From Octopus sinensis (Eukaryota), in NCBI RefSeq assembly GCF_006345805.1, contig NC_043004.1:103354001-103418000 (forward strand): a DNA stretch of 64,000 nucleotides. Direction: 5' to 3'. The translations under genes were made by a program, and so were the position numbers. Of this stretch, positions 20,706-62,602 are shown piece after piece; within the stretch, counting starts at the first letter, position 1; every line of letters begins with the position of its first letter. The notes under the pieces are model-generated. The model did not search any database. It saw only the letters and a list, made by a program, of their open reading frames with translations, and had not been told where the DNA came from.

Positions 20706-21349
20706 ATGCCCTTCCAAATGCCAGCCACTTTACAGTGTGGATGGGATGCTTTTTACGTGGAATGATCATAAAATCGTGAGTTCGATTCTTGTGGCATGTT
20801 GTCATTGCATTATGTTCCATTTCAATGCGCTATGATACCACACTTGCAGCATTCAGTTGCTACACTGACCACTGACCTGGCTCTCTGTTAGTAATGATGA
20901 CAAGTGTTCCAGTTGATATGGCCAACTCCACAGACAGGCATACCATTAATGTGGTTCTCAGGGAGATTCAGCATGATGTGCCAAATGTGACGAGGCTGGC
21001 TCACTGCACTACAAGTACAGCTCATTTTTACTAACTGAATAGACTGGAACAACATGAAACAAAATGTCTTGTTTGAGGACACAGATCTCCACTGGGAATC
21101 AAACTCACAACCTTATTATCATGAGCCAAATACATTAACCACTGTGTCATCACTTTCACAATCACAACATGACACTGTGCACCATATATCCATTGCTATG
21201 CACCATCACATGTCATTTAGTTCCTACACCAAACTTATTCCACTATCATTTCCTTCATTTAGTCATTTCTTTGATAACATACACAACTAGATTTCCCATA
21301 CTTGAAATAAATTATCAACTCTTTGCATAAAAAAAAATATTAAATAAAA

Positions 21350-24290
21350 CACCCCACAACATAGACTGGTAGTTAGTGACTTTAGGATCAGGACTAGGAG
21401 GACAACCAGAAGACGACAAATATGGAGAAGAAGGATCTGGAAGCTTAAAGATCCTGCAAATGGACAGAGATTTAGGGACATATTACTTGAAGCCTCTGAC
21501 GAAGTAGAAGGGGATAGAGCATCACAGGGGGTAGAAGACAGCTGGACGTTTCTAAGGGACAACCTGCTGAGAGCCACTGACCAGATCTGTGGCTGGTGCA
21601 AAGTCCCCTCTCGACCTAGAATAACGTGGTGGTGGAACAATATTGTAGACAGGGCTATTAGAGAAAAGAGACAGGCTTGGAAGGTCTGGAAAAATGGGGT
21701 AGCAGGGAATTGTATCAGACTGCCAAAAGAGAAGCTAGGAGACAGGTTTATTTAGCCAGAGGGGAAGCAGATAAGAAAAAATTTGCCAATGTTCTGCGCC
21801 GTGAGGACCAAAACTGGAGGTGTTTCGTGTTGCAAGACAGTGTGTGAGAGAGAATCGTGATGTGGTAGGAGAGAAGTGTGTTCGCATGGAAGATGGTTCA
21901 CTTGCGCTAAATGAGGATGCAAAGAGAGAGGTTTGGAGATGCCACTATGAAAGGTTGCTGAATGAAGAAAATGAATGGGATAAAGAGAGTCTGCTGCGAA
22001 TGTTGACCCACAGAGGGACCAGCTATCCGAGTTGATAGTTCTGTGGTAGCTAAGGCAATTAGAAGCATGAAGACAGGGAAAGCCCCAGGCCCATCAGGAA
22101 TCACTGCAGAGATGCTCAAAATGTCTGGTAGTGTCGGCTATAGCCTAGTCACCCATATAGTTAATCAGGTGATACACAAAGGGGTCATACCCAATGACTG
22201 GTGTAGCAGTATAATAGTCAACTGCTACAAAGGTAAAGGTGATGCCCTAGATACAATAACTACAGAGGTATCAAGCTGTTGGACCAGGTGATGAAGGTTA
22301 TGGAGAGGGTCATAGCCCAACTAATTAGAGAGAGAGTTAGTTTAGATGAGATGCAGTTTGGGTTTGTGCCAGGGAAAAGTACTACTGATGCTATATTCCT
22401 GGTAAGGCAGCTGCAGGAGAAATACCTAGCCAAAGATAAGCCCCTGTACCTGGCTTTTGTTGACATGGAGAAAGCCTTCGACAAGGTCCCCCGATCCCTT
22501 ATCTGGCGGGCAATGAGAAAACTAGGGATAGATGAATGGTTAGTAAGAGCTGTGCGGGCCATGTATAGGGACGCCGCTAGTAGGGTGAGGGTTGGAAATG
22601 AGTACAGTGAAGAATTCCGGGTAGAGGTAGGGGTCCACCAAGGCTCAGTACTCAGCCCCCTCCTATTTATCATAGTCCTCCAGGCAATAACGGAGGAATT
22701 CAAGACAGGATGCCCTTGGGAGCTCCTCTATGCTGATGACCTTGCTCTAATTGCTGAGTCGCTATCAGAACTGGAGGAGAAGTTTCAGGTGTGGAAACAA
22801 GGATTAGAATCGAAGGGCCTCAGAGTCAATCTAGCTAAAACCAAAGTCGTAATCAGTAGGAAGGTAGACAAATCACAAACACCTTCAGGTAGATGGCCCT
22901 GCTCGATCTGTAGAAAAGGTGTAGGTAGAAACTCTAAGATGCACCAAGTGTAAGCTATGGACACAAGAGATGCAGCAATGTCAAAGGAAGGCTAACTAGG
23001 AAGATGGTTTTTGTATGTGGCAGATGCTCAGGAACAATAAACACTGAAAATGCTCTGAGACCAACTTCCGTCACTTTCCAGGGAGAAAAACTAGAAATAG
23101 TTGATAGTTTCCGTTACCTAGGTGACCAAGTCAGCAGTGGGGGCGGGTGTGCTGAAAGTGTAACTGCTAGAGTAAGAATAGCTTGGGCAAAGTTCAGAGA
23201 GCTCTTACCTCTGCTGGTGACAAAAGGCCTCTCGCACAGAGTGAAAGGCAGACTGTATGATGCGTGTGTACGAACAGCCATGCTACATGGCAGTGAAACA
23301 TGAGCCGTGACTGCTGAGGATATGCGTAAGCTCGCTAGAAATGAAGCCAGTATGCTCCGATGGATGTGTAATGCCGGTACTCACACTCGGCAGAGTGTAA
23401 GTACCTTGAGAGAAAAGCTGGACCTAAGAAGCATCAGTTGTGGTGTGCAAGAGAGACGTTTGCGCTGGTATGGTCATGTGGCGAGAATGGATGAAGATAG
23501 TTGTGTGAAAAAGTGCCACACCCTAGCGGTTGAGGGAACCTGTGGAAGAGGCAGACCCAGGAAAACCTGGGACGAGGTGGTGAAGCACGACCTTCGAACT
23601 TTAGGTCTCACTGAGGAAATGACTAGAGACCGAGACCTCTGGAAGTGTGCTGTGCGTGAGAAGACCCGGCAGGACAAGTGAGTCCACAACCCGTGGCCTT
23701 CTACATGGGATGGAGCCAGCCTACGTATGCATACCTTCCCTTCTTGGGACACAAAACTCTACTTGTGAAGACGTGTTGAAGCAGCAGTGAGGATCAGAAT
23801 CGAAATCGATCAATGGAAATTGCGGATGTGCTACCAGTGCCGGTGGCATGTCGAAACTCTGCTTGTGAAGACCCATTGAGGCAAGTGAGGTTCAGAATCG
23901 AAATCGATCAATGGAAATCGATCAATGGAAATTGCAGATGTGTTACCAGTGCCGGTGGCATGTAAGAGAACTTTCCGTTTCACGACCGTTGCCAGCACCG
24001 CCCCGTTTCGTGTCCGTTGCCAGCCTCGCCTGGCCCTCGTGCCGGTGGCACATAAAAAGTACCATCCGTTCGTGGCCGTTTGCCAGCTCTGTCTGGCACC
24101 AGTGCGGATGGCACGTAAAAAGCACCCACTACACTCACGGAGTGGTTGGCGTTAGGAAGGGCATCCAGCCGTAGAAACACTGCCAGATTTGACTGGGCCT
24201 GATGAAGCCTTCTGGCTTCACAGACCCCAGTAGAACCGTCCAACCCATGCTAGCATGGAAAACGGACGCTAAATGATGATGATGATGATG
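21350..24290 (+). mobile_element. RTE-clade LINE, 5'-truncated and frameshifted, with 3'UTR and (GAT)n tail
   Basis: RT motifs QFGF, KAFD, QGSVLSP and YADD, C-terminal RLRWYGH, tail ending 24290. Confidence 0.93.
22279..22953 (+). pseudogene. RTE reverse transcriptase core fragment
   Basis: 224-aa ORF with YADD, flanked by frameshifts. Confidence 0.9.
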
Positions 24291-24336: not shown

Positions 24337-24429
24337 TCACTGTCCAAGAAACACGCTTGTATAGAAGTCGCAGGCCGTTCCCACTTACTCTATGATATGA
24401 GCAGCCGCAATAAGTCTCGGAGAGGAACT
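24337..24429 (+). CDS. MDC1: MDC1 coding exon 4 (SLSKKHACIEVAGRSHLLYDMSSRNKSRRGT), FHA SxxH and N motifs
   Basis: ttctag / gtaagt, phase 0 to 0. Confidence 0.93.
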
Positions 24430-24674
24430 GTAAGTCATTTCGTATATTTTTTATTGGTTAACTCAATAGATTTCTGTATTGATGAGATTTTGTTGTTTAA
24501 AATATTGGTCAACTGTTTTCCTTTGTTATCTTCTTTAGCATCACCATTTTCATCATTATTCCCACCAGCCTTCTTCTGGGTGTGTTTAGAGGAACTTGAT
24601 ATTCATGATAATTTGTGGCATGGATACAGAAGTATGTGCACCTCCTTTATGTTGCCCCTATTTTATTATTTCAG

Positions 24675-24764
24675 CTTTTCCTAACCCCTGAGGTGCGATA
24701 TGAACTGAAACATAAAGATACGCTGATCTTTGCTGATGTTAGCTGTCAATACGCTATTGAAGAG
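24675..24764 (+). CDS. MDC1: MDC1 coding exon 5 (LFLTPEVRYELKHKDTLIFADVSCQYAIEE), FHA end
   Basis: tttcag / gtatga, phase 0 to 0. Confidence 0.92.
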
Positions 24765-24924
24765 GTATGAATTTATCATTTTATTTGTATGAAATTAGAT
24801 GTTGTTGTTATTGTTGTTGTCATTGATTGTAGTTTTGGCAATACTGACTGTAAGAGTGCAATTCATTTGATACCAAACCACCTGATACCACTTGTGGTTT
24901 CATGATACAAAACCACTTGCTTTA

Positions 24925-26677: not shown

Positions 26678-26831
26678 CATTTGCTTTATAACTGGTTTCA
26701 AGTTCAATCTGATTGTGTCGCATCTTGGGCAGTGAATGTTTGTTCCTTATTTTTGCTATGTATGTCTTCTCTGTTGCGCATTTTATTTAAAAAGTTTAAC
26801 GGTCTCTTTTGTTATTTTTTTTTTTTTCCAG

Positions 26832-26999
26832 ATTGCTCGTGCATCAGATTCTGGCTCTGACACTGAGTCAATGTCAGATTTGGAAGACAACTTGGACGAA
26901 ATCTCTACAAATACTCCTACAATGTTGAAATCTAATATTTCATTGCAACTGGAAGACTCTAATAGTAGTTCCAGCAGTGACATTCTCCTCCCAACACAG
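26832..26999 (+). CDS. MDC1: MDC1 coding exon 6 (IARASDSGSDTESMSDLED...ILLPTQ)
   Basis: Long T tract plus ccag / gtagtg, 56 codons, SDTE motif. Confidence 0.88.
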
Positions 27000-27777
27000 G
27001 TAGTGTAATGTACTTTAGTGTTACACAATACAGTATTATTGCACACCATTATATATACAAGATGGTTTGTTCTACAACATACAGGTCTACGAATTCCAAC
27101 CGCATATTTATATGGGTGTATATATATATGTGTGTGTGTGTATATATATGTGTATGTGTGTGTATATATATGTATGTGTATGTGTATACATATATGTATG
27201 TGCGTGTATATATATATTATACTTAACCCTTATGATTGGATTCAGTAGACAGAAACTGGCAGAAGCCCTTTGTGTGTGTGTGTGTATGTTTTTATGTATG
27301 TATGTATACGGGCATGTGGTAAGTAGCTTGCTTACTAACCACATGGTTCTGGATTCAGTCCCACTGCGTGGCACCTTAGGCAAGTGGCTTCTCCTATCGC
27401 CTTGGGCCAACCAAATCCTTGTGAGTGGATTTGGTAGACGGAAACTCTGTTTGTGCCCCCCCCCCCCCATCATATCTAGGACTACATTACCCTTCCATTT
27501 TTAAGACAATAAGGTATGATTTCAGTGAGATTTGGCAACTATTTCTAGAAGGTTTAACAAACACATTTGAGTTTCCTCTTCTTGGGCCTTGTATCACTAA
27601 TCGTATTCCTTTCGGTAAACCAAATCTTAGATGGTCAAAGACACTGTTGCAGAATATGTTTTGACAACCCACAATTTTAATGCTTTGTCTATTATACTGC
27701 GAGTAGCATTCAGCCATCAGCATCCACAGTGATATACCTTCGGTGTGTTTTATATTCTTTTGTTTTCATTGCTGCAG

Positions 27778-28843: not shown

Positions 28844-30168
28844 ACAGTTGTGCGTGAGTATCACCATCATTCAAGCTGTGTCCTTCATTTCCAATATTCT
28901 GTGATATTCTGGTTATGAGGAAACATTACCTTACTTGGAAACAGGTGAGGGCTGGTGACAGGAAGGGCATCCAACTGGAAAATCTGCCTCAACAACTTCC
29001 GTCCAACCCATGCAAACATGGGAAAGTCAATGTTAAAACAATGATTATGATGGAATGGTAGAATTGGCAGAGCATCATTCTTAGACTTATTAGAAACATG
29101 TATCCTTTGTGATATTCAACATATTATTGATTACTTTTCCTCTGTTTGATATCATTCTCCCCTAATGGAGGTTGTTAGATACCCATCTTAGGCATTACTC
29201 AGCTGTATAGCTGAGGTAGAGCCTGTTTTTTGCCTTTTCTTTTGTGGTTCAGTCAGACAAACTGGAGCAAGCAACTTTCTACTCAAAGACATGATATATT
29301 CGCTGTAGTAAGATTTTAACTTAAGACTATATCTTTTGTCCTTAACCTCACAGCTTTTGTATATTTACTGGTACTAACCCTATTTCCTGACCCTGTCTTC
29401 ATCCATCAGATAACTGGAGATTAAGCCAAATACAGCTACCTAAGGCAGCCACACTAAATATTGTTAAGCATCAGTCATTTCTACTGCCTCCACCATCCTT
29501 GAATATTTGGCTCTTTACCAATGTCATTATAAAGAGTTCTTACATTAATGTAGCGCTATGAGTTCATAAGAGAAGAAATCTAATCAGCAGTATGAACCCC
29601 AGAATATGACTGGTACTTATTTTATTAAACTCTGGAATGAAAGTCAAAATTAACTCCAGTGGGATTTGAACACCAGATGCACTGCAAAACGTTTATTGTT
29701 TCTGCCACTCCACACTCTAATAATAATAATAATAATAATGAGGTTAATTTCTAATATACATATATACACTAGGCCACACATTTGGAGGAAGCAGGAGGCG
29801 GGAGTGTCAATTGATTAAATTGATCCTAGTATTTTACTGGTACTATTGACCCTACAAAACGATGTAAAGCAAGTGGACCTCAGTGGTATCTGAACACAGA
29901 ATTTAAAGGAACATGACTATAGACTGCAGAACATTTTGTCCAGTCTCTTACAATTTTATGAATCCATTACATATTTGGTGGTGGTGGGGGGTAAAGTTAC
30001 TTAGTCTCTTAAGATTGAGCCCGTGTACTTGATTGGCATTTCATTTTATTGATCACTGAATGATTAAAAGGTTAAGCCAAACTGAACAGGATCTGAAATC
30101 AGAATGTAAAGAAAATAATATAAGCTTGACTGGCACTGTATTGACACAGGTGCCATCAGCCACCTTGC

Positions 30169-50258: not shown

Positions 50259-50381
50259 AGTAGTAACATGGCCACTCCTAAGCATCTCAAGTCCAACCAG
50301 TTTATATCTCCCAGGAGAAGCAATGGACAATTAAAGCCCAATGTCATGTTTACTGGTTTGACAGATGATAAGGGTCAAAGG
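50259..50381 (+). CDS. MDC1: MDC1 coding exon 14, BRCT1 start (KPNVMFTGLTDDKGQR)
   Basis: tttcag / gtaagt, phase 0-0. Confidence 0.93.
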
Positions 50382-52644: not shown

Positions 52645-52713
52645 ATTGTTACAGAACTTGGCGGGATTGTTGGGACCAACTTTAATTACTGTACTCACCT
52701 CATCACTGACAAG
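52645..52713 (+). CDS. MDC1: MDC1 coding exon 15 (IVTELGGIVGTNFNYCTHLITDK)
   Basis: tgtcag / gtaata. BRCT LGG and THL motifs. Confidence 0.93.
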
Positions 52714-54745: not shown

Positions 54746-54845
54746 GTCCGCCGAACTGTGAAATTCTTGTGTTGCCTGGCACGTGGTATTCCAATCATCT
54801 CATTATCTTGGTTGATTAAATGCAAATCTGCCAAGACGTTCATTG
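54746..54845 (+). CDS. MDC1: MDC1 coding exon 16 (VRRTVKFLCCLARGIPIISLSWLIKCKSAKTFI)
   Basis: tttcag / gtaagt. Phosphopeptide-binding RRTVK motif. Confidence 0.95.
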
Positions 54846-56652: not shown

Positions 56653-56808
56653 ATTACGCTCCATATATTTTATCGGATTCTGATGCTGAAAAACAATACA
56701 GTTTCTCCTTAAGCCAGTCTCTTGAACTTGCTCGAAGTTTGTCACCACTAAAGGGATACAAGATACATGTTACCAAATCTGTTAAACCTAGTGCTGAACA
56801 GATGAAAG
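56653..56808 (+). CDS. MDC1: MDC1 coding exon 17, BRCT linker and BRCT2 start (DYAPYILSD...HVTKSVKPSAEQMK)
   Basis: tcacag / gtaaat, phase 1-1. Confidence 0.93.
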
Positions 56809-57767: not shown

Positions 57768-57793
57768 AAATTATTGAGAGTTGCAAAGCCAAG
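57768..57793 (+). CDS. MDC1: MDC1 coding exon 18, 26-nt microexon (EIIESCKAK)
   Basis: T tract plus caacag / gtaatt. Corresponds to the BRCT2 helix EII.CCGG position. Confidence 0.9.
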
Positions 57794-58687: not shown

Positions 58688-58848
58688 TTTTTAGTAAAAC
58701 TTCCCACAGAGTTTAAAGAAGAAACCATTGTGATTTCCTGTGAAGATGACAAGTCTTCGTGTGAGAAAGCCATCCAAGCTGGCATCCCAATAGTGGAAGC
58801 TGAGTTCCTGTTGACTGGAATACTGCAACAAGATTTAACAATAGACAA
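58688..58848 (+). CDS. MDC1: MDC1 coding exon 19, BRCT2 end (FLVKLP...EFLLTGILQQDLTID)
   Basis: ttgcag acceptor. Ends at U12 donor ATATCCTTT, phase 2. Confidence 0.92.
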
Positions 58849-59189
58849 ATATCCTTTCTTGCAACATTTTATATGTATGTTTTTTGTTTGTTCAATTTTA
58901 TGTTGAATTTTTTTGCCTCTTGGCTTGGTCAGACAAGACTTGTTGGAACAGGTTATCTAAGACCAGATGTTCTTCCCGTCACCGACCCATATCTGTTTCC
59001 CAAGTAAATATGTATGGTTGGTGTTAGGAAGGGCATCCAGCCGTAAAACCCTTGCCAAAACAATCACAGAAGTCTGTTGCAGTCTTTGGCTTGGCCAGCT
59101 CTTGTGGAACCATCCCACCCATGCTAGCATGGAAGATGGATGTTAAACGATGATGATGATGTGTGGGTGGGTGTTAGAACCTGTATTGA

Positions 59190-59856
59190 CCCTTTAGTAT
59201 TCAGATTTCGGTCAAGTGTGATGCTTATTTATTTACATTCTTTTGAAGTAACACGCCAGGCGAAATGCTTAATGGTATTTTGTTTATCAGGGCGGCAAGC
59301 TGGCAGAAACGTTAGCGTGCCGGCGAAATGCTTCACGGTATTTTGGCTGCCGTTACATTGTGACTTCAAATTCCACCGAGGTCGACTTTGCCTTTCATCC
59401 TTTCGGGGTCGATAAATTAAGTACCAGTTACGCACTGGGGTCGATATAATCGACTTAATACCTATGTCTGTCCTTGTTTGTCCCCTCTATGTTTAGCCCC
59501 TTGTGGGTAATAAAGAAATAGGTATTTTGTTTATCTTTAAGTTCTGAGTTCAAATTCTGTCAAGGTCGACTTTGCCTGTCATCCTTTTGGGGTTGATGAA
59601 TTAAGTACCAGTTGCATACTGGGCTTGATCTCATCGACTGGCCCCTTCCCCCAAAATTTTAGGCATTGTACCAAGAGTAGAAAAGATTCTTTTGAATTAA
59701 TTCATGCATTATCTCGTAACTTCATGGTTTCAATGATGTGATTATTTATTTTTAGAATAACATTGTAGGATAAGTGAGAGAGGTCAAATCTGGCCAATTT
59801 GAACATAATCCAGGTAGAATATTTGAACCGAATACGGCTATTTTAAATTCAAAGGG
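59190..59856. mobile_element. piggyBac-type MITE interrupted by SINE-B copies
   Basis: CCCTTT start and AAAGGG end. Body resumes near 59690. Confidence 0.6.
59232..59682 (+). mobile_element. Tandem SINE-B copies
   Basis: Duplicated head, full copy 59291-59521, second partial copy. Confidence 0.8.
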
Positions 59857-61838
59857 TTTAGTGAGAGTGAGTGTGTGGTGTGTAAAGTCTTTGTGTCTTT
59901 TTTGGCTCACCATTCTGTAGAATTTAGCACATGAGAGAAGAATCTACTTGTAATTCGGACATCGGTTTATTACATGTAACATTAACTGGTGAATTTTGGA
60001 AAGCAAGTTGGAAAGTCCTGTCCAGCGAGAGAGAGAGCCAAAATATCTCACTGTTTTTATTAATGCCCTTAAGAAAGGTCTAAATGTCACTCAGCATCAT
60101 CATCATTTAACATCTGTCTCACATGCTGGGGTGATTTTGGGGGTTCAACAGGAGCTAGTAAGCCAGAGGACTGTGTCAGGATCCGTTGTCAACCTTGGCA
60201 TGGTTTCTACAGCTGGATGTCCTTCCTAATACTGACTACTTTGCAGAATACACTGGGTGCTTTTTACATGCTACCAGCACTGGTAGGTCACTAACTTGCA
60301 GGACAAAGACACCCTCAACTGAGAGGGGGAGTAGTAGTATTGAGGGTGGTGGCTTTGTGTCAAGTGACGGGAGGTTATTGACAGAAGCAGGTTTTTGCTG
60401 TCAAGCAGATACATGATTACCCCAGTTAAAGTGGGGGTAGGGAGAGAGAAAGAGAGATGGCTGTCATGTGCTAGGGCTTATCCTCAAGGTACATGGAGGT
60501 GAATGTAAATGAAGTGTTACTCTTGACAAAAGAAGCCTTAGTTTTATGTAAGTTAATGTTAAGATGCATATTGATCGTCAAATAGAATGCTTTGAGATAT
60601 TTGTTGCGGCTTTCTGTGCTCCAAGTTCAAGTCCTGTGGGTGTCAGTTTTGCTTTCTATTCCTTCAGGGTCAATAAGAAAAAAGGTATTCATTCTGGGCA
60701 GTAGATTGGCAGAATTTAGGGGATTATGTGCAGTCATGGCTGTAAAGATACACACATATAGATATAGACATATATGTATACTGTATTTTAATGTGTATAA
60801 GGAACCCCCTAATTTGGGGGGCTTAAAATTTGGAAAAAAGGTTTTGTAAGGGATTATGATACTATCCATGTATAAGAAACTCCCATATTTTTTTAATCTA
60901 ATTTTTGGCTAACAAGGATTCCTTATACACATTAAAATATGGTGTATGTATCTATATACAATGAGTTCCTTTCAGTGTCTGTCTACCAAATCCATTCACA
61001 AGGCTTTGATCAGCCCTGGGTTGTAATAGCAGACACTTGCCCAAGGTGTCACACAGTGTGACTGAACTCAGAACCATGTGGTTGGGAAACAAACTTCTTA
61101 ACACATAGCCACACTTGCACCTGTATTTATCTATCATACATAGCACAGGCTTCTTTCAGTTTCCATTGACCAAATCCACTTTCAAGGCTTTGGTTGACCT
61201 GTGACAGTAGTTGAAGACATTTGCCAAAGGTGCTACATAATGGACTTCACCTGAAATCACGTGGTTAGAAAGTGTGTGTGGCTGCCTGGCTAAGATGTTT
61301 GCTTCAAAATTACATTGCAATGGGCTGACCAATGCAGTGTAAGTGAATTGGTTGCTGGAAATTAGTGTGTTTGTGTCTTAACATTTGTACTAGGAAAACC
61401 AAGTTCAAAGGACTTGGGGAAATATTGATTTCAAATTTCGACACAAGGCCAGCAATTATGGGGAAGGGGTAAGTCGGTTGTATCGCCCCCCCCCCAGTAC
61501 TCACCTAGTACTTATTTTATTGACCCTGAAAGGATAAAAGGCAAAGTTGAGTACAGTGGAGTTGGGGAAATATTAATTGCTAGGAAACAGATGTGGTTTG
61601 ACAACAAGAAGATCTTCTGGCTATAAAATATTTAAAAGAAGATCTCTCTGAACAAGTTTCTTCTTAAAAATGATGCTGGTGATGTATATATATATATGTG
61701 TTTTTAGCCAAATGTTACAGTTTCTAAACAAAAAAGAAAGTAGTCAATGCATGTTGCAGTGTTTATTTAAGATTTTGGATTGCTGGTTCAGTTTCATTTT
61801 CTATTTTATGTTGTTTAGTTGCCTTAACAGAACAGTAC

Positions 61839-61935
61839 ATATCAGATCTTTCATACATCATCAACCAGTGAAAAATTCAAACAGCCTGCTCCTACAGAGA
61901 AGAAATCCAGAACCACAAGAAAAAGCAAGAAATGA
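61839..61935 (+). CDS. MDC1: MDC1 coding exon 20, terminal (KYQIFHTSSTSEKFKQPAPTEKKSRTTRKSKK-stop)
   Basis: Follows U12 branch GCCTTAAC (61821-61828) and AC acceptor (61837-61838). In frame to TGA at 61933-61935. Confidence 0.82.
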
Positions 61936-62602
61936 TGGGAAAAATCTGAATGAATCCTTAAAACAGAAAGCAAAAACTCCACACATATTTCATTTGGTCT
62001 TTTATTCCGTCTATATTCAGTTGTCTCTGAATTAATGTATCTTCTGGCAACTGAATTCATTTACTGACAGAACTATTCTAGAATTTGTAATGTCATTGTT
62101 AGTAATTAAAATTATCAGCTGACAGCTGATGGTTTCATAGACAGCATACTGAGATTGAGTTGACTGTACTTACAGGTACAATCATCTTAATATGAAGATG
62201 GTTCTATCAAATCTCTAATCTCACTTACCATTAAACACATACAAACACACACATATAATATATACACTATATTCCATAGTCTAGTGTCAAAATAATCATC
62301 ATTTTCTTTACATGGTTTTTTTATTGGGATATTTCCAAATCTATCCTAAATTTTATATCAGTTCCTATACTGTAATGAATTGCAATTGGCTGTGACCTCC
62401 AAAAGACAATGTTTTTATTTTGTTGCTTTTTATGACTTGCTGCTGTTGTTATTATCCATACTTGGGGTTAGGGTGAATCTGGGTTTGTTATCTTCAATTT
62501 CATTTGAACTTAAAGATATTCCAGAAGGAGTTTAAATTATTTTGAAGATTGTCATCATAGATATTGTTGTTGTTGATTAATCAATTATGGTGGTGTTGAT
62601 TA

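What the first reader, a model, noticed from the sequence alone, without database searches (positions are those of the whole stretch)
58849..61838. Minor-spliceosome AT-AC intron defines the MDC1 C-terminus
Seen: ATATCCTTT donor, GCCTTAAC branch, AC acceptor 10 nt later, and an in-frame 31-codon last exon. The 2990-nt intron is filled with TEs. Known: these are the U12 consensus signals, AT-AC introns are rare, and U12 splicing can be rate-limiting. Gene predictors limited to GT-AG would read through to a false stop at 58906. Inference: minor-spliceosome control of a core DNA-damage gene.
Basis: partly seen in the sequence, partly recalled or inferred. Interest (0 to 1): 0.78.

Follow-up and report, generated by a model that had tools for sequence, protein, structure and literature searches.

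The report
U12 AT-AC last intron of MDC1
The last intron of this animal's MDC1-like DNA-damage gene is a genuine minor-spliceosome (U12-type, AT-AC) intron, and it lies at the same spot as a known U12 intron in the related gene PAXIP1, so this is a well-supported but ordinary example of a known kind of intron.

Summary
ATATCCTTT at 58849 is the only + strand copy of ATATCCTT in the 64 kb window. It begins exactly where homology to the second BRCT domain ends. GCCTTAAC lies at 61821-61828, with the branch A 11 nt from the AC at 61837-38, and there is no pyrimidine tract. Splicing 58848|61839 yields ...LTGILQQDLTIDK-YQIFHTSSTSEKFKQPAPTEKKSRTTRKSKK*.

Comparative evidence supports this junction:
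- Homologues from cDNA carry the same tail pattern: Y-x-[IL]-F followed by a basic end.
- 47 of 94 exon-level genomic ORFs read Y-P-[F/L] at this point, which is the translation of TATCCTT.
- Five other loci hold complete U12 introns at the same position and phase, two AT-AC and three GT-AG.
- In one other species a cDNA aligned to its genome shows the homologous 291-nt intron removed, and only AT-AC termini fit.

The tandem BRCT region matches human MDC1 best. Vertebrate MDC1 lacks the intron. Mammalian PAXIP1, a listed minor-intron gene, has an ATATCCTTT donor at the same position.

Not shown: junction reads in this organism, or any regulatory "control" by the minor spliceosome. This is a new member of a known kind, of modest interest.

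The parts
56653..56808 (+). Coding exon (end of BRCT1 linker and start of BRCT2: ...LKGYKIHVTKSVKPSAEQMK). Donor AAAG|GTAAAT, phase 1.
   Evidence: tblastn of homologues; splice sites; gap-free alignment to human MDC1.
57768..57793 (+). 26-nt micro-exon encoding (E)IIESCKAK, flanked by acag| and |gtaatt.
   Evidence: Frame and splice sites. An equivalent small exon is confirmed by cDNA against genome in another species (L011 2773-2800).
58688..58848 (+). Penultimate coding exon: FLVKLPTEFKEETIVISCEDDKSSCEKAIQAGIPIVEAEFLLTGILQQDLTID + AA (phase 2).
   Evidence: Pfam BRCT_2 at 9.7e-26 on the assembled protein.
58849..58857 (+). U12-type 5' splice site ATATCCTTT (9/9 match to RTATCCTTT).
   Evidence: Identical in the close relative L001. 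RTATCCTTT is at the same position in L002, L004-L009 and L011.
58849..61838 (+). 2990-nt AT-AC intron. About half is interspersed repeat copies.
58904..58906 (+). TGA reached if the intron is not removed (product ...DKYPFLQHFICMFFVCSILC*).
   Evidence: This stop is not conserved in the relative L001.
61821..61828 (+). U12 branch-site motif GCCTTAAC, with the presumed branch A at 61827.
   Evidence: The branch A is 11 nt from the 3' end. No pyrimidine tract: 45% Y against 55-85% at the five GT-AG acceptors.
61837..61838 (+). AC 3' terminal dinucleotide of the intron.
61839..61935 (+). Coding part of the last exon: (K)YQIFHTSSTSEKFKQPAPTEKKSRTTRKSKK plus TGA at 61933-61935.
   Evidence: The tail pattern is conserved in cDNA-type homologues P0002, P0003, P0098 and in fish.
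62105..62110 (+). ATTAAA, a candidate poly(A) signal about 170 nt after the stop.
   Evidence: This is a motif match only.

Best explanation
The interval 58849-61838 is a U12-type (minor-spliceosome) AT-AC intron in phase 2. It is the last intron of an MDC1 orthologue.

Mechanism, from established knowledge of the pathway: the U11/U12 di-snRNP pairs with the 5' site ATATCCTTT and the branch site CCTTAAC. The 3' site is chosen by its short distance from the branch A, and AC at 61838 is 11 nt away. The U4atac/U6atac.U5 tri-snRNP then completes catalysis.

The spliced mRNA encodes the end of BRCT2 (Y-Q-I-F) and a 31-residue tail ending in a basic cluster (KKSRTTRKSKK).

The intron is old. It is at the same codon position in many invertebrate MDC1-like genes, with both AT-AC and GT-AG termini, and in mammalian PAXIP1. 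It has been lost from vertebrate MDC1.

What is shown and what is inferred:
- Shown: the signals, the frame, conservation of the position and of the product, and transcript-level removal of the homologous intron in another species.
- Inferred: removal in this organism, dependence on the minor spliceosome, and any function of the tail.
For: Signals:
- The donor matches the consensus 9/9 and is the only + strand copy in the window.
- The branch motif has its A 11 nt from AC, and there is no pyrimidine tract.
- The five upstream introns are ordinary GT-AG.

Product:
- Splicing at AC keeps the spacing LTGxLxQ + 6 residues + Y-x-[IL]-F found in P0002, P0003 and fish MDC1.
- A signal-blind protein filter picks this single acceptor out of 563.

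Other taxa:
- Complete U12 introns at the same position and phase: L005 (AT-AC, 1597 nt), L008 (AT-AC, 1292 nt), L006 (GT-AG, 199 nt), L009 (GT-AG, 383 nt), L002 (GT-AG, 94 nt).
- Each has a branch motif 9-11 nt from its 3' end, and AT always pairs with AC and GT with AG.
- 47 of 94 homologous ORFs carry the Y-P-[FL] read-through signature.

Transcript evidence in another species:
- cDNA L010 aligns to genome L011 at 98-99% identity in 6 blocks.
- Four of the introns are GT-AG.
- The last intron (291 nt) fits only as GAAAA|ATATCCTTTT...TCTTCCTTAACTTATGTTAC|TTAT.

Paralogue:
- The mammalian PAXIP1 exon (P0038, 1.1e-45 to PDB 3SQD) ends GAGTC|ATATCCTTTTTG at the homologous codon.
- MIDB lists a minor intron at chr7:154944165-154946364, near what I recall (from memory) as the 3' end of the human gene, and another in the 5' part. 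MDC1 is not listed.
Against: - No RNA from this organism was available, so the 58848|61839 junction itself is unobserved.
- The first branch-motif position is G, not the consensus T.
- An AG at 61834-35 would also be in frame with the same donor.
- The taxa of the comparison loci are unknown, because they come from unlabelled Logan/ENA contigs.
- One locus with the AT donor (L004) showed no matching acceptor within 10 kb.
Confidence: 0.9

Rival explanations
1. Same U12 donor and branch site, but the 3' site used is the AG at 61834-61835 (an AT-AG intron). This gives ...TIDNTYQIF..., one residue longer.
For: It is in frame with the same tail (sequence). AT-AG U12 introns are known to exist (established knowledge).
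Against: - The AG is only 8 nt from the branch A, shorter than in any of the six homologous introns (9-11 nt).
- It breaks the conserved 6-residue spacing before Y.
- In every complete homologous intron examined here, AT pairs with AC.
Confidence: 0.05
2. The intron is mostly retained, or transcripts end inside it, so that the main protein ends ...DKYPFLQHFICMFFVCSILC* at 58906.
For: - The open frame runs 19 codons into the intron.
- AATAAA and ATTAAA occur inside the intron at 59509 and 60931.
- U12 introns are often retained at a measurable level (MIDB paper PMC6717393, Table S5).
Against: - The read-through peptide and its stop are not conserved even in a relative about 95% identical.
- Transcripts in other species carry the spliced basic tail.
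- The full set of U12 signals is conserved.
Confidence: 0.03
3. A major-spliceosome GT-AG intron from a cryptic donor (for example tat|GTTTTTTG after 58878) to AG 61835. This reaches the same tail frame with about 10 extra residues.
For: 16 GT-AG combinations end in the same basic tail.
Against: - Every combination either deletes invariant BRCT residues or inserts unconserved read-through residues.
- The donors are poor matches to GTRAGT.
- The acceptor lacks a pyrimidine tract.
Confidence: 0.02

Closest known systems
U12-type (minor-spliceosome) introns, AT-AC subtype
   Same: - 5' site ATATCCTTT.
- Branch motif CCTTAAC about 11 nt from the 3' end.
- No pyrimidine tract.
- AT-AC termini.
- Conserved position, with AT-AC and GT-AG forms in different lineages.
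   Different: Nothing structural differs. The first branch-motif base is G rather than T. Splicing and snRNA dependence were not observed in this organism.
The minor intron of vertebrate PAXIP1 (PTIP) that MIDB lists near the gene's 3' end (human chr7:154944165-154946364; mouse chr5:27742504-27744114)
   Same: - Same codon position and phase: 1 nt before the Tyr codon that follows LTGxLxQ + 6 residues in the last BRCT domain.
- Same ATATCCTTT donor in the mammalian contig L007.
   Different: - It is in a different gene. PAXIP1 matches the window protein at 6e-30 against 6.5e-47 for MDC1.
- The PAXIP1 last exon encodes only ...YKFN, with no basic tail.
- That the MIDB intron is the one seen in L007 is inferred from its place near the 3' end of the gene. 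I recall the gene's ends from memory.
Vertebrate MDC1
   Same: - FHA fragment, acidic S/T-rich stretch and C-terminal tandem BRCT.
- Gap-free 182-residue alignment of the BRCT pair.
- Fish MDC1 also ends in a basic cluster.
   Different: - Teleost-like and mammal-like genomic ORFs run from the BRCT exon straight to the stop, so there is no intron here.
- MDC1 is absent from the human and mouse minor-intron lists.

Membership tests
U12-type intron (AT-AC subtype) | 5' splice site matching /RTATCCTTT | tested here: met
   ATATCCTTT at 58849-58857, a 9/9 match and the only + strand copy in 64 kb.
U12-type intron (AT-AC subtype) | Branch-site motif TCCTTRAY a short, fixed distance (about 10-15 nt) from the 3' end | tested here: met
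   GCCTTAAC at 61821-28. The core CCTTAAC is exact and the first base is G instead of T. The branch A is 11 nt from the 3' end.
U12-type intron (AT-AC subtype) | No polypyrimidine tract before the 3' site | tested here: met
   45% pyrimidine in the 20 nt before AC, against 55-85% for the five GT-AG acceptors of the same gene.
U12-type intron (AT-AC subtype) | AT...AC termini that give an in-frame, conserved product | tested here: met
   This is the only one of 563 AC/AG sites that gives the conserved tail.
U12-type intron (AT-AC subtype) | Position conserved in orthologues, with U12 signals kept | tested here: met
   L002, L005, L006, L008, L009 and L011 hold complete introns. L001, L004 and L007 show the donor only.
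U12-type intron (AT-AC subtype) | The junction is observed in transcripts of this organism | not testable with these tools
   No transcript of this species was found. The homologous intron is removed in another species (L010 against L011).
U12-type intron (AT-AC subtype) | Splicing depends on U11, U12, U4atac and U6atac | not testable with these tools
   This needs a knock-down experiment. No minor snRNA gene lies in the window (Rfam: 0 hits), which says nothing either way.
MDC1 orthologue | C-terminal tandem BRCT closest to that of MDC1 | tested here: met
   PDB search: MDC1 at 6.5e-47 (163 bits) against PAXIP1 at 6e-30. Pfam BRCT_2, BRCT and RTT107_BRCT_5.
MDC1 orthologue | N-terminal FHA domain | tested here: inconclusive
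   Two exon fragments (24337-24431 and about 24690-24767) match the MDC1 FHA domain best, but only at E = 1.6e-3. Pfam finds nothing on the single short fragment. The first FHA exon was not located.
MDC1 orthologue | SDT-type acidic CK2 phospho-cluster | not tested
   An acidic S/T-rich exon at 26736-27005 was seen but not analysed.

The most novel reading that the evidence does not exclude
The U12 intron predates the split of MDC1 and PAXIP1. It has been kept in invertebrate MDC1 because it gates the only exon that encodes the basic C-terminal cluster, which may be a nuclear localisation signal. If so, the efficiency of minor-spliceosome splicing would set how much import-competent MDC1 is made, and intron retention would yield a tail-less protein.
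Probability: 0.1. Interest if true: 0.55.

Novelty: new member of a known kind. Interest (0 to 1): 0.33.

Why it matters
- For annotation: the true C-terminus of this MDC1 orthologue, and a 26-nt micro-exon upstream of it, will be missed by GT-AG-only or ORF-based callers. Public protein sets already hold such read-through products (P0001; NCBI VTJ92112.1 for PAXIP1).
- For intron evolution: this is a clean case of one U12 intron position shared by two old paralogues (MDC1-like and PAXIP1). It shows AT-AC and GT-AG forms in different lineages and has been lost from vertebrate MDC1.
- For DNA-damage biology: invertebrate MDC1, like vertebrate PAXIP1, depends on the minor spliceosome. Whether that dependence is regulatory is unknown.

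Tried and rejected
- Contig look-ups for P0004 (fish, NCBI) and P0012 returned nothing. I could therefore not read a labelled vertebrate MDC1 locus. I relied instead on exon-level ORFs that run to the stop.
- L004 has the AT donor, but no acceptor with a conserved tail was found within 10 kb.
- Pfam did not detect FHA on the short exon fragment. A PDB search of two joined fragments gave only a weak MDC1 FHA match.
- The Rfam scan of the window gave 0 hits.
- A literature search for the SRA run numbers, meant to name the organisms, gave 0 papers. The species of the window and of all comparison loci remain unnamed.
- The main texts of the held papers do not discuss MDC1 or PAXIP1 U12 introns. 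Only the MIDB tables do.
- The AG acceptor at 61835 and the GT-AG alternatives were considered and rejected on spacing, branch distance and conservation.
- GTATCCTT at 29100 (+) lies in repeat-like sequence and was not pursued as a second U12 site.

Full report
**1. What is in the sequence**

On the + strand a coding exon runs from 58688 to 58848. It encodes FLVKLPTEFKEETIVISCEDDKSSCEKAIQAGIPIVEAEFLLTGILQQDLTID and ends with AA, so the next intron is in phase 2.

- The next nine bases, 58849-58857, are ATATCCTTT.
- ATATCCTT occurs three times in the window on both strands, which is what chance predicts (2.84). Only this copy is on the + strand.
- GCCTTAAC lies at 61821-61828 and AC at 61837-61838.
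- Joining 58848 to 61839 gives AA|A = K, then YQIFHTSSTSEKFKQPAPTEKKSRTTRKSKK, and TGA at 61933-61935.
- Without splicing the frame reads DKYPFLQHFICMFFVCSILC and stops at 58904-58906.
- The intron is 2990 nt. 49% of it matches interspersed repeats that have up to 16 other copies in the window.

**2. The gene**

Homologue-guided mapping gives these exons: 50346-50381, 52645-52713, 54746-54845, 56653-56808, a 26-nt micro-exon at 57768-57793, 58688-58848 and 61839-61935.

- The five introns between these exons, other than the last, are GT-AG with GTAAGT-like donors and pyrimidine-rich acceptors.
- The last acceptor has only 45% pyrimidine in its final 20 nt.
- The assembled 214-residue protein matches Pfam BRCT_2, BRCT and RTT107_BRCT_5.
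- It aligns without gaps over 182 residues to human MDC1 (6.5e-47), ahead of PAXIP1 (6e-30).
- Upstream exon fragments match the MDC1 FHA domain best, though weakly (1.6e-3).

I accept the MDC1-orthologue label. The FHA evidence is weak.

**3. Is the AT-AC junction the real one?**

Protein evidence:
- Homologues that span several exons, and are therefore cDNA-like, end ...NIEAYGLFSAS...KRRKR (P0002)...AENYILFQDKKRS...KKRR (P0003) and ...AESYILFQDKKRS...KKRR (P0098). Fish MDC1-like proteins end ...LQTYRLSAP...RKKT.
- All of them have six residues between LTGxLxQ and the Tyr/His, then x-[IL]-[FS], then a basic end.
- The AC acceptor reproduces this spacing exactly. The AG at 61834-35 would add one residue and lies only 8 nt from the branch A.
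- I scanned all 563 AC/AG dinucleotides downstream of the donor with a filter that looks only at the encoded tail. One passed, 61838, and it is the one with the U12 branch motif 11 nt upstream.
- GT-AG pairs that reach the same tail frame do exist (16 of them). Each one either deletes invariant BRCT residues or inserts unconserved read-through residues from a poor donor.

**4. Other species**

A profile search returned 87 proteins, mostly exon-level ORFs called on genomic contigs.

- Across the 94 homologues from both searches, 47 read Y-P-[F/L] exactly at positions +7 to +9 after LTGxLxQ. That is the translation of TATCCTTT.
- I read the DNA of nine such loci. All nine have RTATCCTTT starting 1 nt before the Tyr codon, in phase 2.

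Five of the loci are long enough to hold the whole intron:

| Locus | Termini | Length (nt) | 3' end of intron |
|---|---|---|---|
| L005 | AT-AC | 1597 | ttccttaacaaagatac\| |
| L008 | AT-AC | 1292 | attccttaacacctatac\| |
| L006 | GT-AG | 199 | tttccttaatgtcaatctag\| |
| L009 | GT-AG | 383 | gaccttgaccagctcacag\| |
| L002 | GT-AG | 94 | cccttgactgtggtcag\| |

- In each case the acceptor was found by the tail-only filter and then turned out to have a branch motif 9-11 nt upstream.
- AT donors always pair with AC, and GT donors with AG.
- The tails are SYRLFASDKRK...KKRRR, SYRLFTNGDKRR...KKRKR, AYRIFGNTV...KKKGR, AYTLYNEEG...KRRKR and THNLFPESS...RKRRR.

**5. Transcript evidence, in another species**

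- The 990-nt contig L010 encodes P0003. It aligns to the 4158-nt genomic contig L011 at 98-99% identity in six blocks.
- Four of the gaps between blocks resolve as GT-AG introns.
- The last gap (291 nt) has a 4-nt placement ambiguity. Only one placement has known termini: GAAAA|ATATCCTTTTATG...TCTTCCTTAACTTATGTTAC|TTATATT, which is AT-AC.
- The genomic read-through gives AEK-YPF and the cDNA gives AEN-YILF. This is what a phase-2 intron at this point predicts.
- The small exon equivalent to window 57768-57793 is confirmed in the same alignment.

**6. Vertebrates and the paralogue**

- Teleost-like ORFs (P0017, P0032, P0035, P0042 and others) and a mammal-like MDC1 ORF (P0074...EAFVLSNLEMLST) run from the BRCT exon straight to the stop, so they have no intron at this point.
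- MDC1 is absent from the human and mouse minor-intron tables of MIDB (PMC6717393).
- PAXIP1 is in those tables, with two minor introns per species. The human one at chr7:154944165-154946364 and the mouse one at chr5:27742504-27744114 lie at the 3' end of the gene. I recall the gene's ends from memory.
- P0038 is a mammalian PAXIP1 exon. It matches PDB 3SQD at 1.1e-45, and its cluster members are named PAXIP1 of Camelus and a Marmota protein.
- Its DNA (L007) reads GAT TAT GAG TC|ATATCCTTTTTG. This is the same position and phase as in the window.
- The solved protein continues ...ESYKF where the genomic ORF reads ...ESYPF.

The simplest reading is that one U12 intron was inherited by both paralogues, kept in PAXIP1 and in invertebrate MDC1-like genes, and lost from vertebrate MDC1. 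This is an inference. The comparison contigs carry no taxon labels.

**7. How it most likely works**

- The U11/U12 di-snRNP recognises ATATCCTTT and CCTTAAC together.
- The 3' site is set by distance from the branch A.
- U4atac/U6atac.U5 then completes the reaction. This is established knowledge of the pathway and was not tested here.
- The terminal exon is probably defined together with the ATTAAA at 62105 (motif only).
- If the intron is not removed, the protein keeps the BRCT core but replaces Y-Q-I-F and the basic tail with 18 unconserved residues.
- The tail ends in a K/R cluster in every invertebrate and fish homologue seen. That suggests a nuclear localisation signal, but this is a guess.
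- Nothing here shows that the splicing step is slow or regulated.

**8. Verdict**

- The structural interpretation is supported at about 0.9 confidence. The regulatory inference is untested.
- U12 introns number in the hundreds in animals that keep the minor spliceosome, and this one is the positional homologue of a catalogued PAXIP1 intron. I therefore rate it a new member of a known kind.
- Its value lies in annotation and in tracing the intron's history. Interest is modest.

Noticed in passing
window 57768-57793 (+): A 26-nt micro-exon (acag|AAATTATTGAGAGTTGCAAAGCCAAG|gtaatt) encodes (E)IIESCKAK of BRCT2. It is easy for gene predictors to miss. An equivalent small exon is confirmed by cDNA against genome in another species (L011 2773-2800).
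   Followed up: yes
L007 (mammalian PAXIP1 contig), donor at 453; P0099 = NCBI VTJ92112.1: The PAXIP1 exon that encodes the end of the last BRCT domain stops at GAGTC|ATATCCTTTTTG, the same codon position and phase as the window's intron. A deposited Marmota monax protein ends ...LDYESYPF, so it reads into that U12 intron.
   Followed up: partly
P0017, P0032, P0035, P0042, P0045, P0054, P0066-P0071, P0073, P0074: Teleost-like and mammal-like MDC1 genomic ORFs run from the BRCT exon to the stop with no interruption. Vertebrate MDC1 therefore appears to have lost this intron. Arthropod PAXIP1-like ORFs (tick P0072, spider P0083) also lack it.
   Followed up: partly
window 21348-23678 (+), RVT_1 at 22243-22950: A reverse-transcriptase ORF fragment (Pfam RVT_1, 4.6e-34) from a retrotransposon sits just upstream of the FHA-coding exon fragment at 24337. 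Short SINE-like repeats recur throughout the window.
   Followed up: partly
window 26736-27005 (+): An open frame rich in acidic residues and Ser/Thr (…SDSGSDTESMSDLEDN…SSSSSD…) resembles the SDT/CK2 phospho-cluster region of MDC1.
   Followed up: no
L004 10150: This contig (61% identical exon) has the donor gttagtaa|ATATCCTTTGATTA, but no acceptor with a conserved tail within the 10 kb available. Either the intron is longer or the tail has diverged.
   Followed up: partly
window 29100 (+): GTATCCTT is the only other + strand match to RTATCCTT in the window. It lies in repeat-like sequence with no coding homology next to it, so it is probably chance.
   Followed up: no
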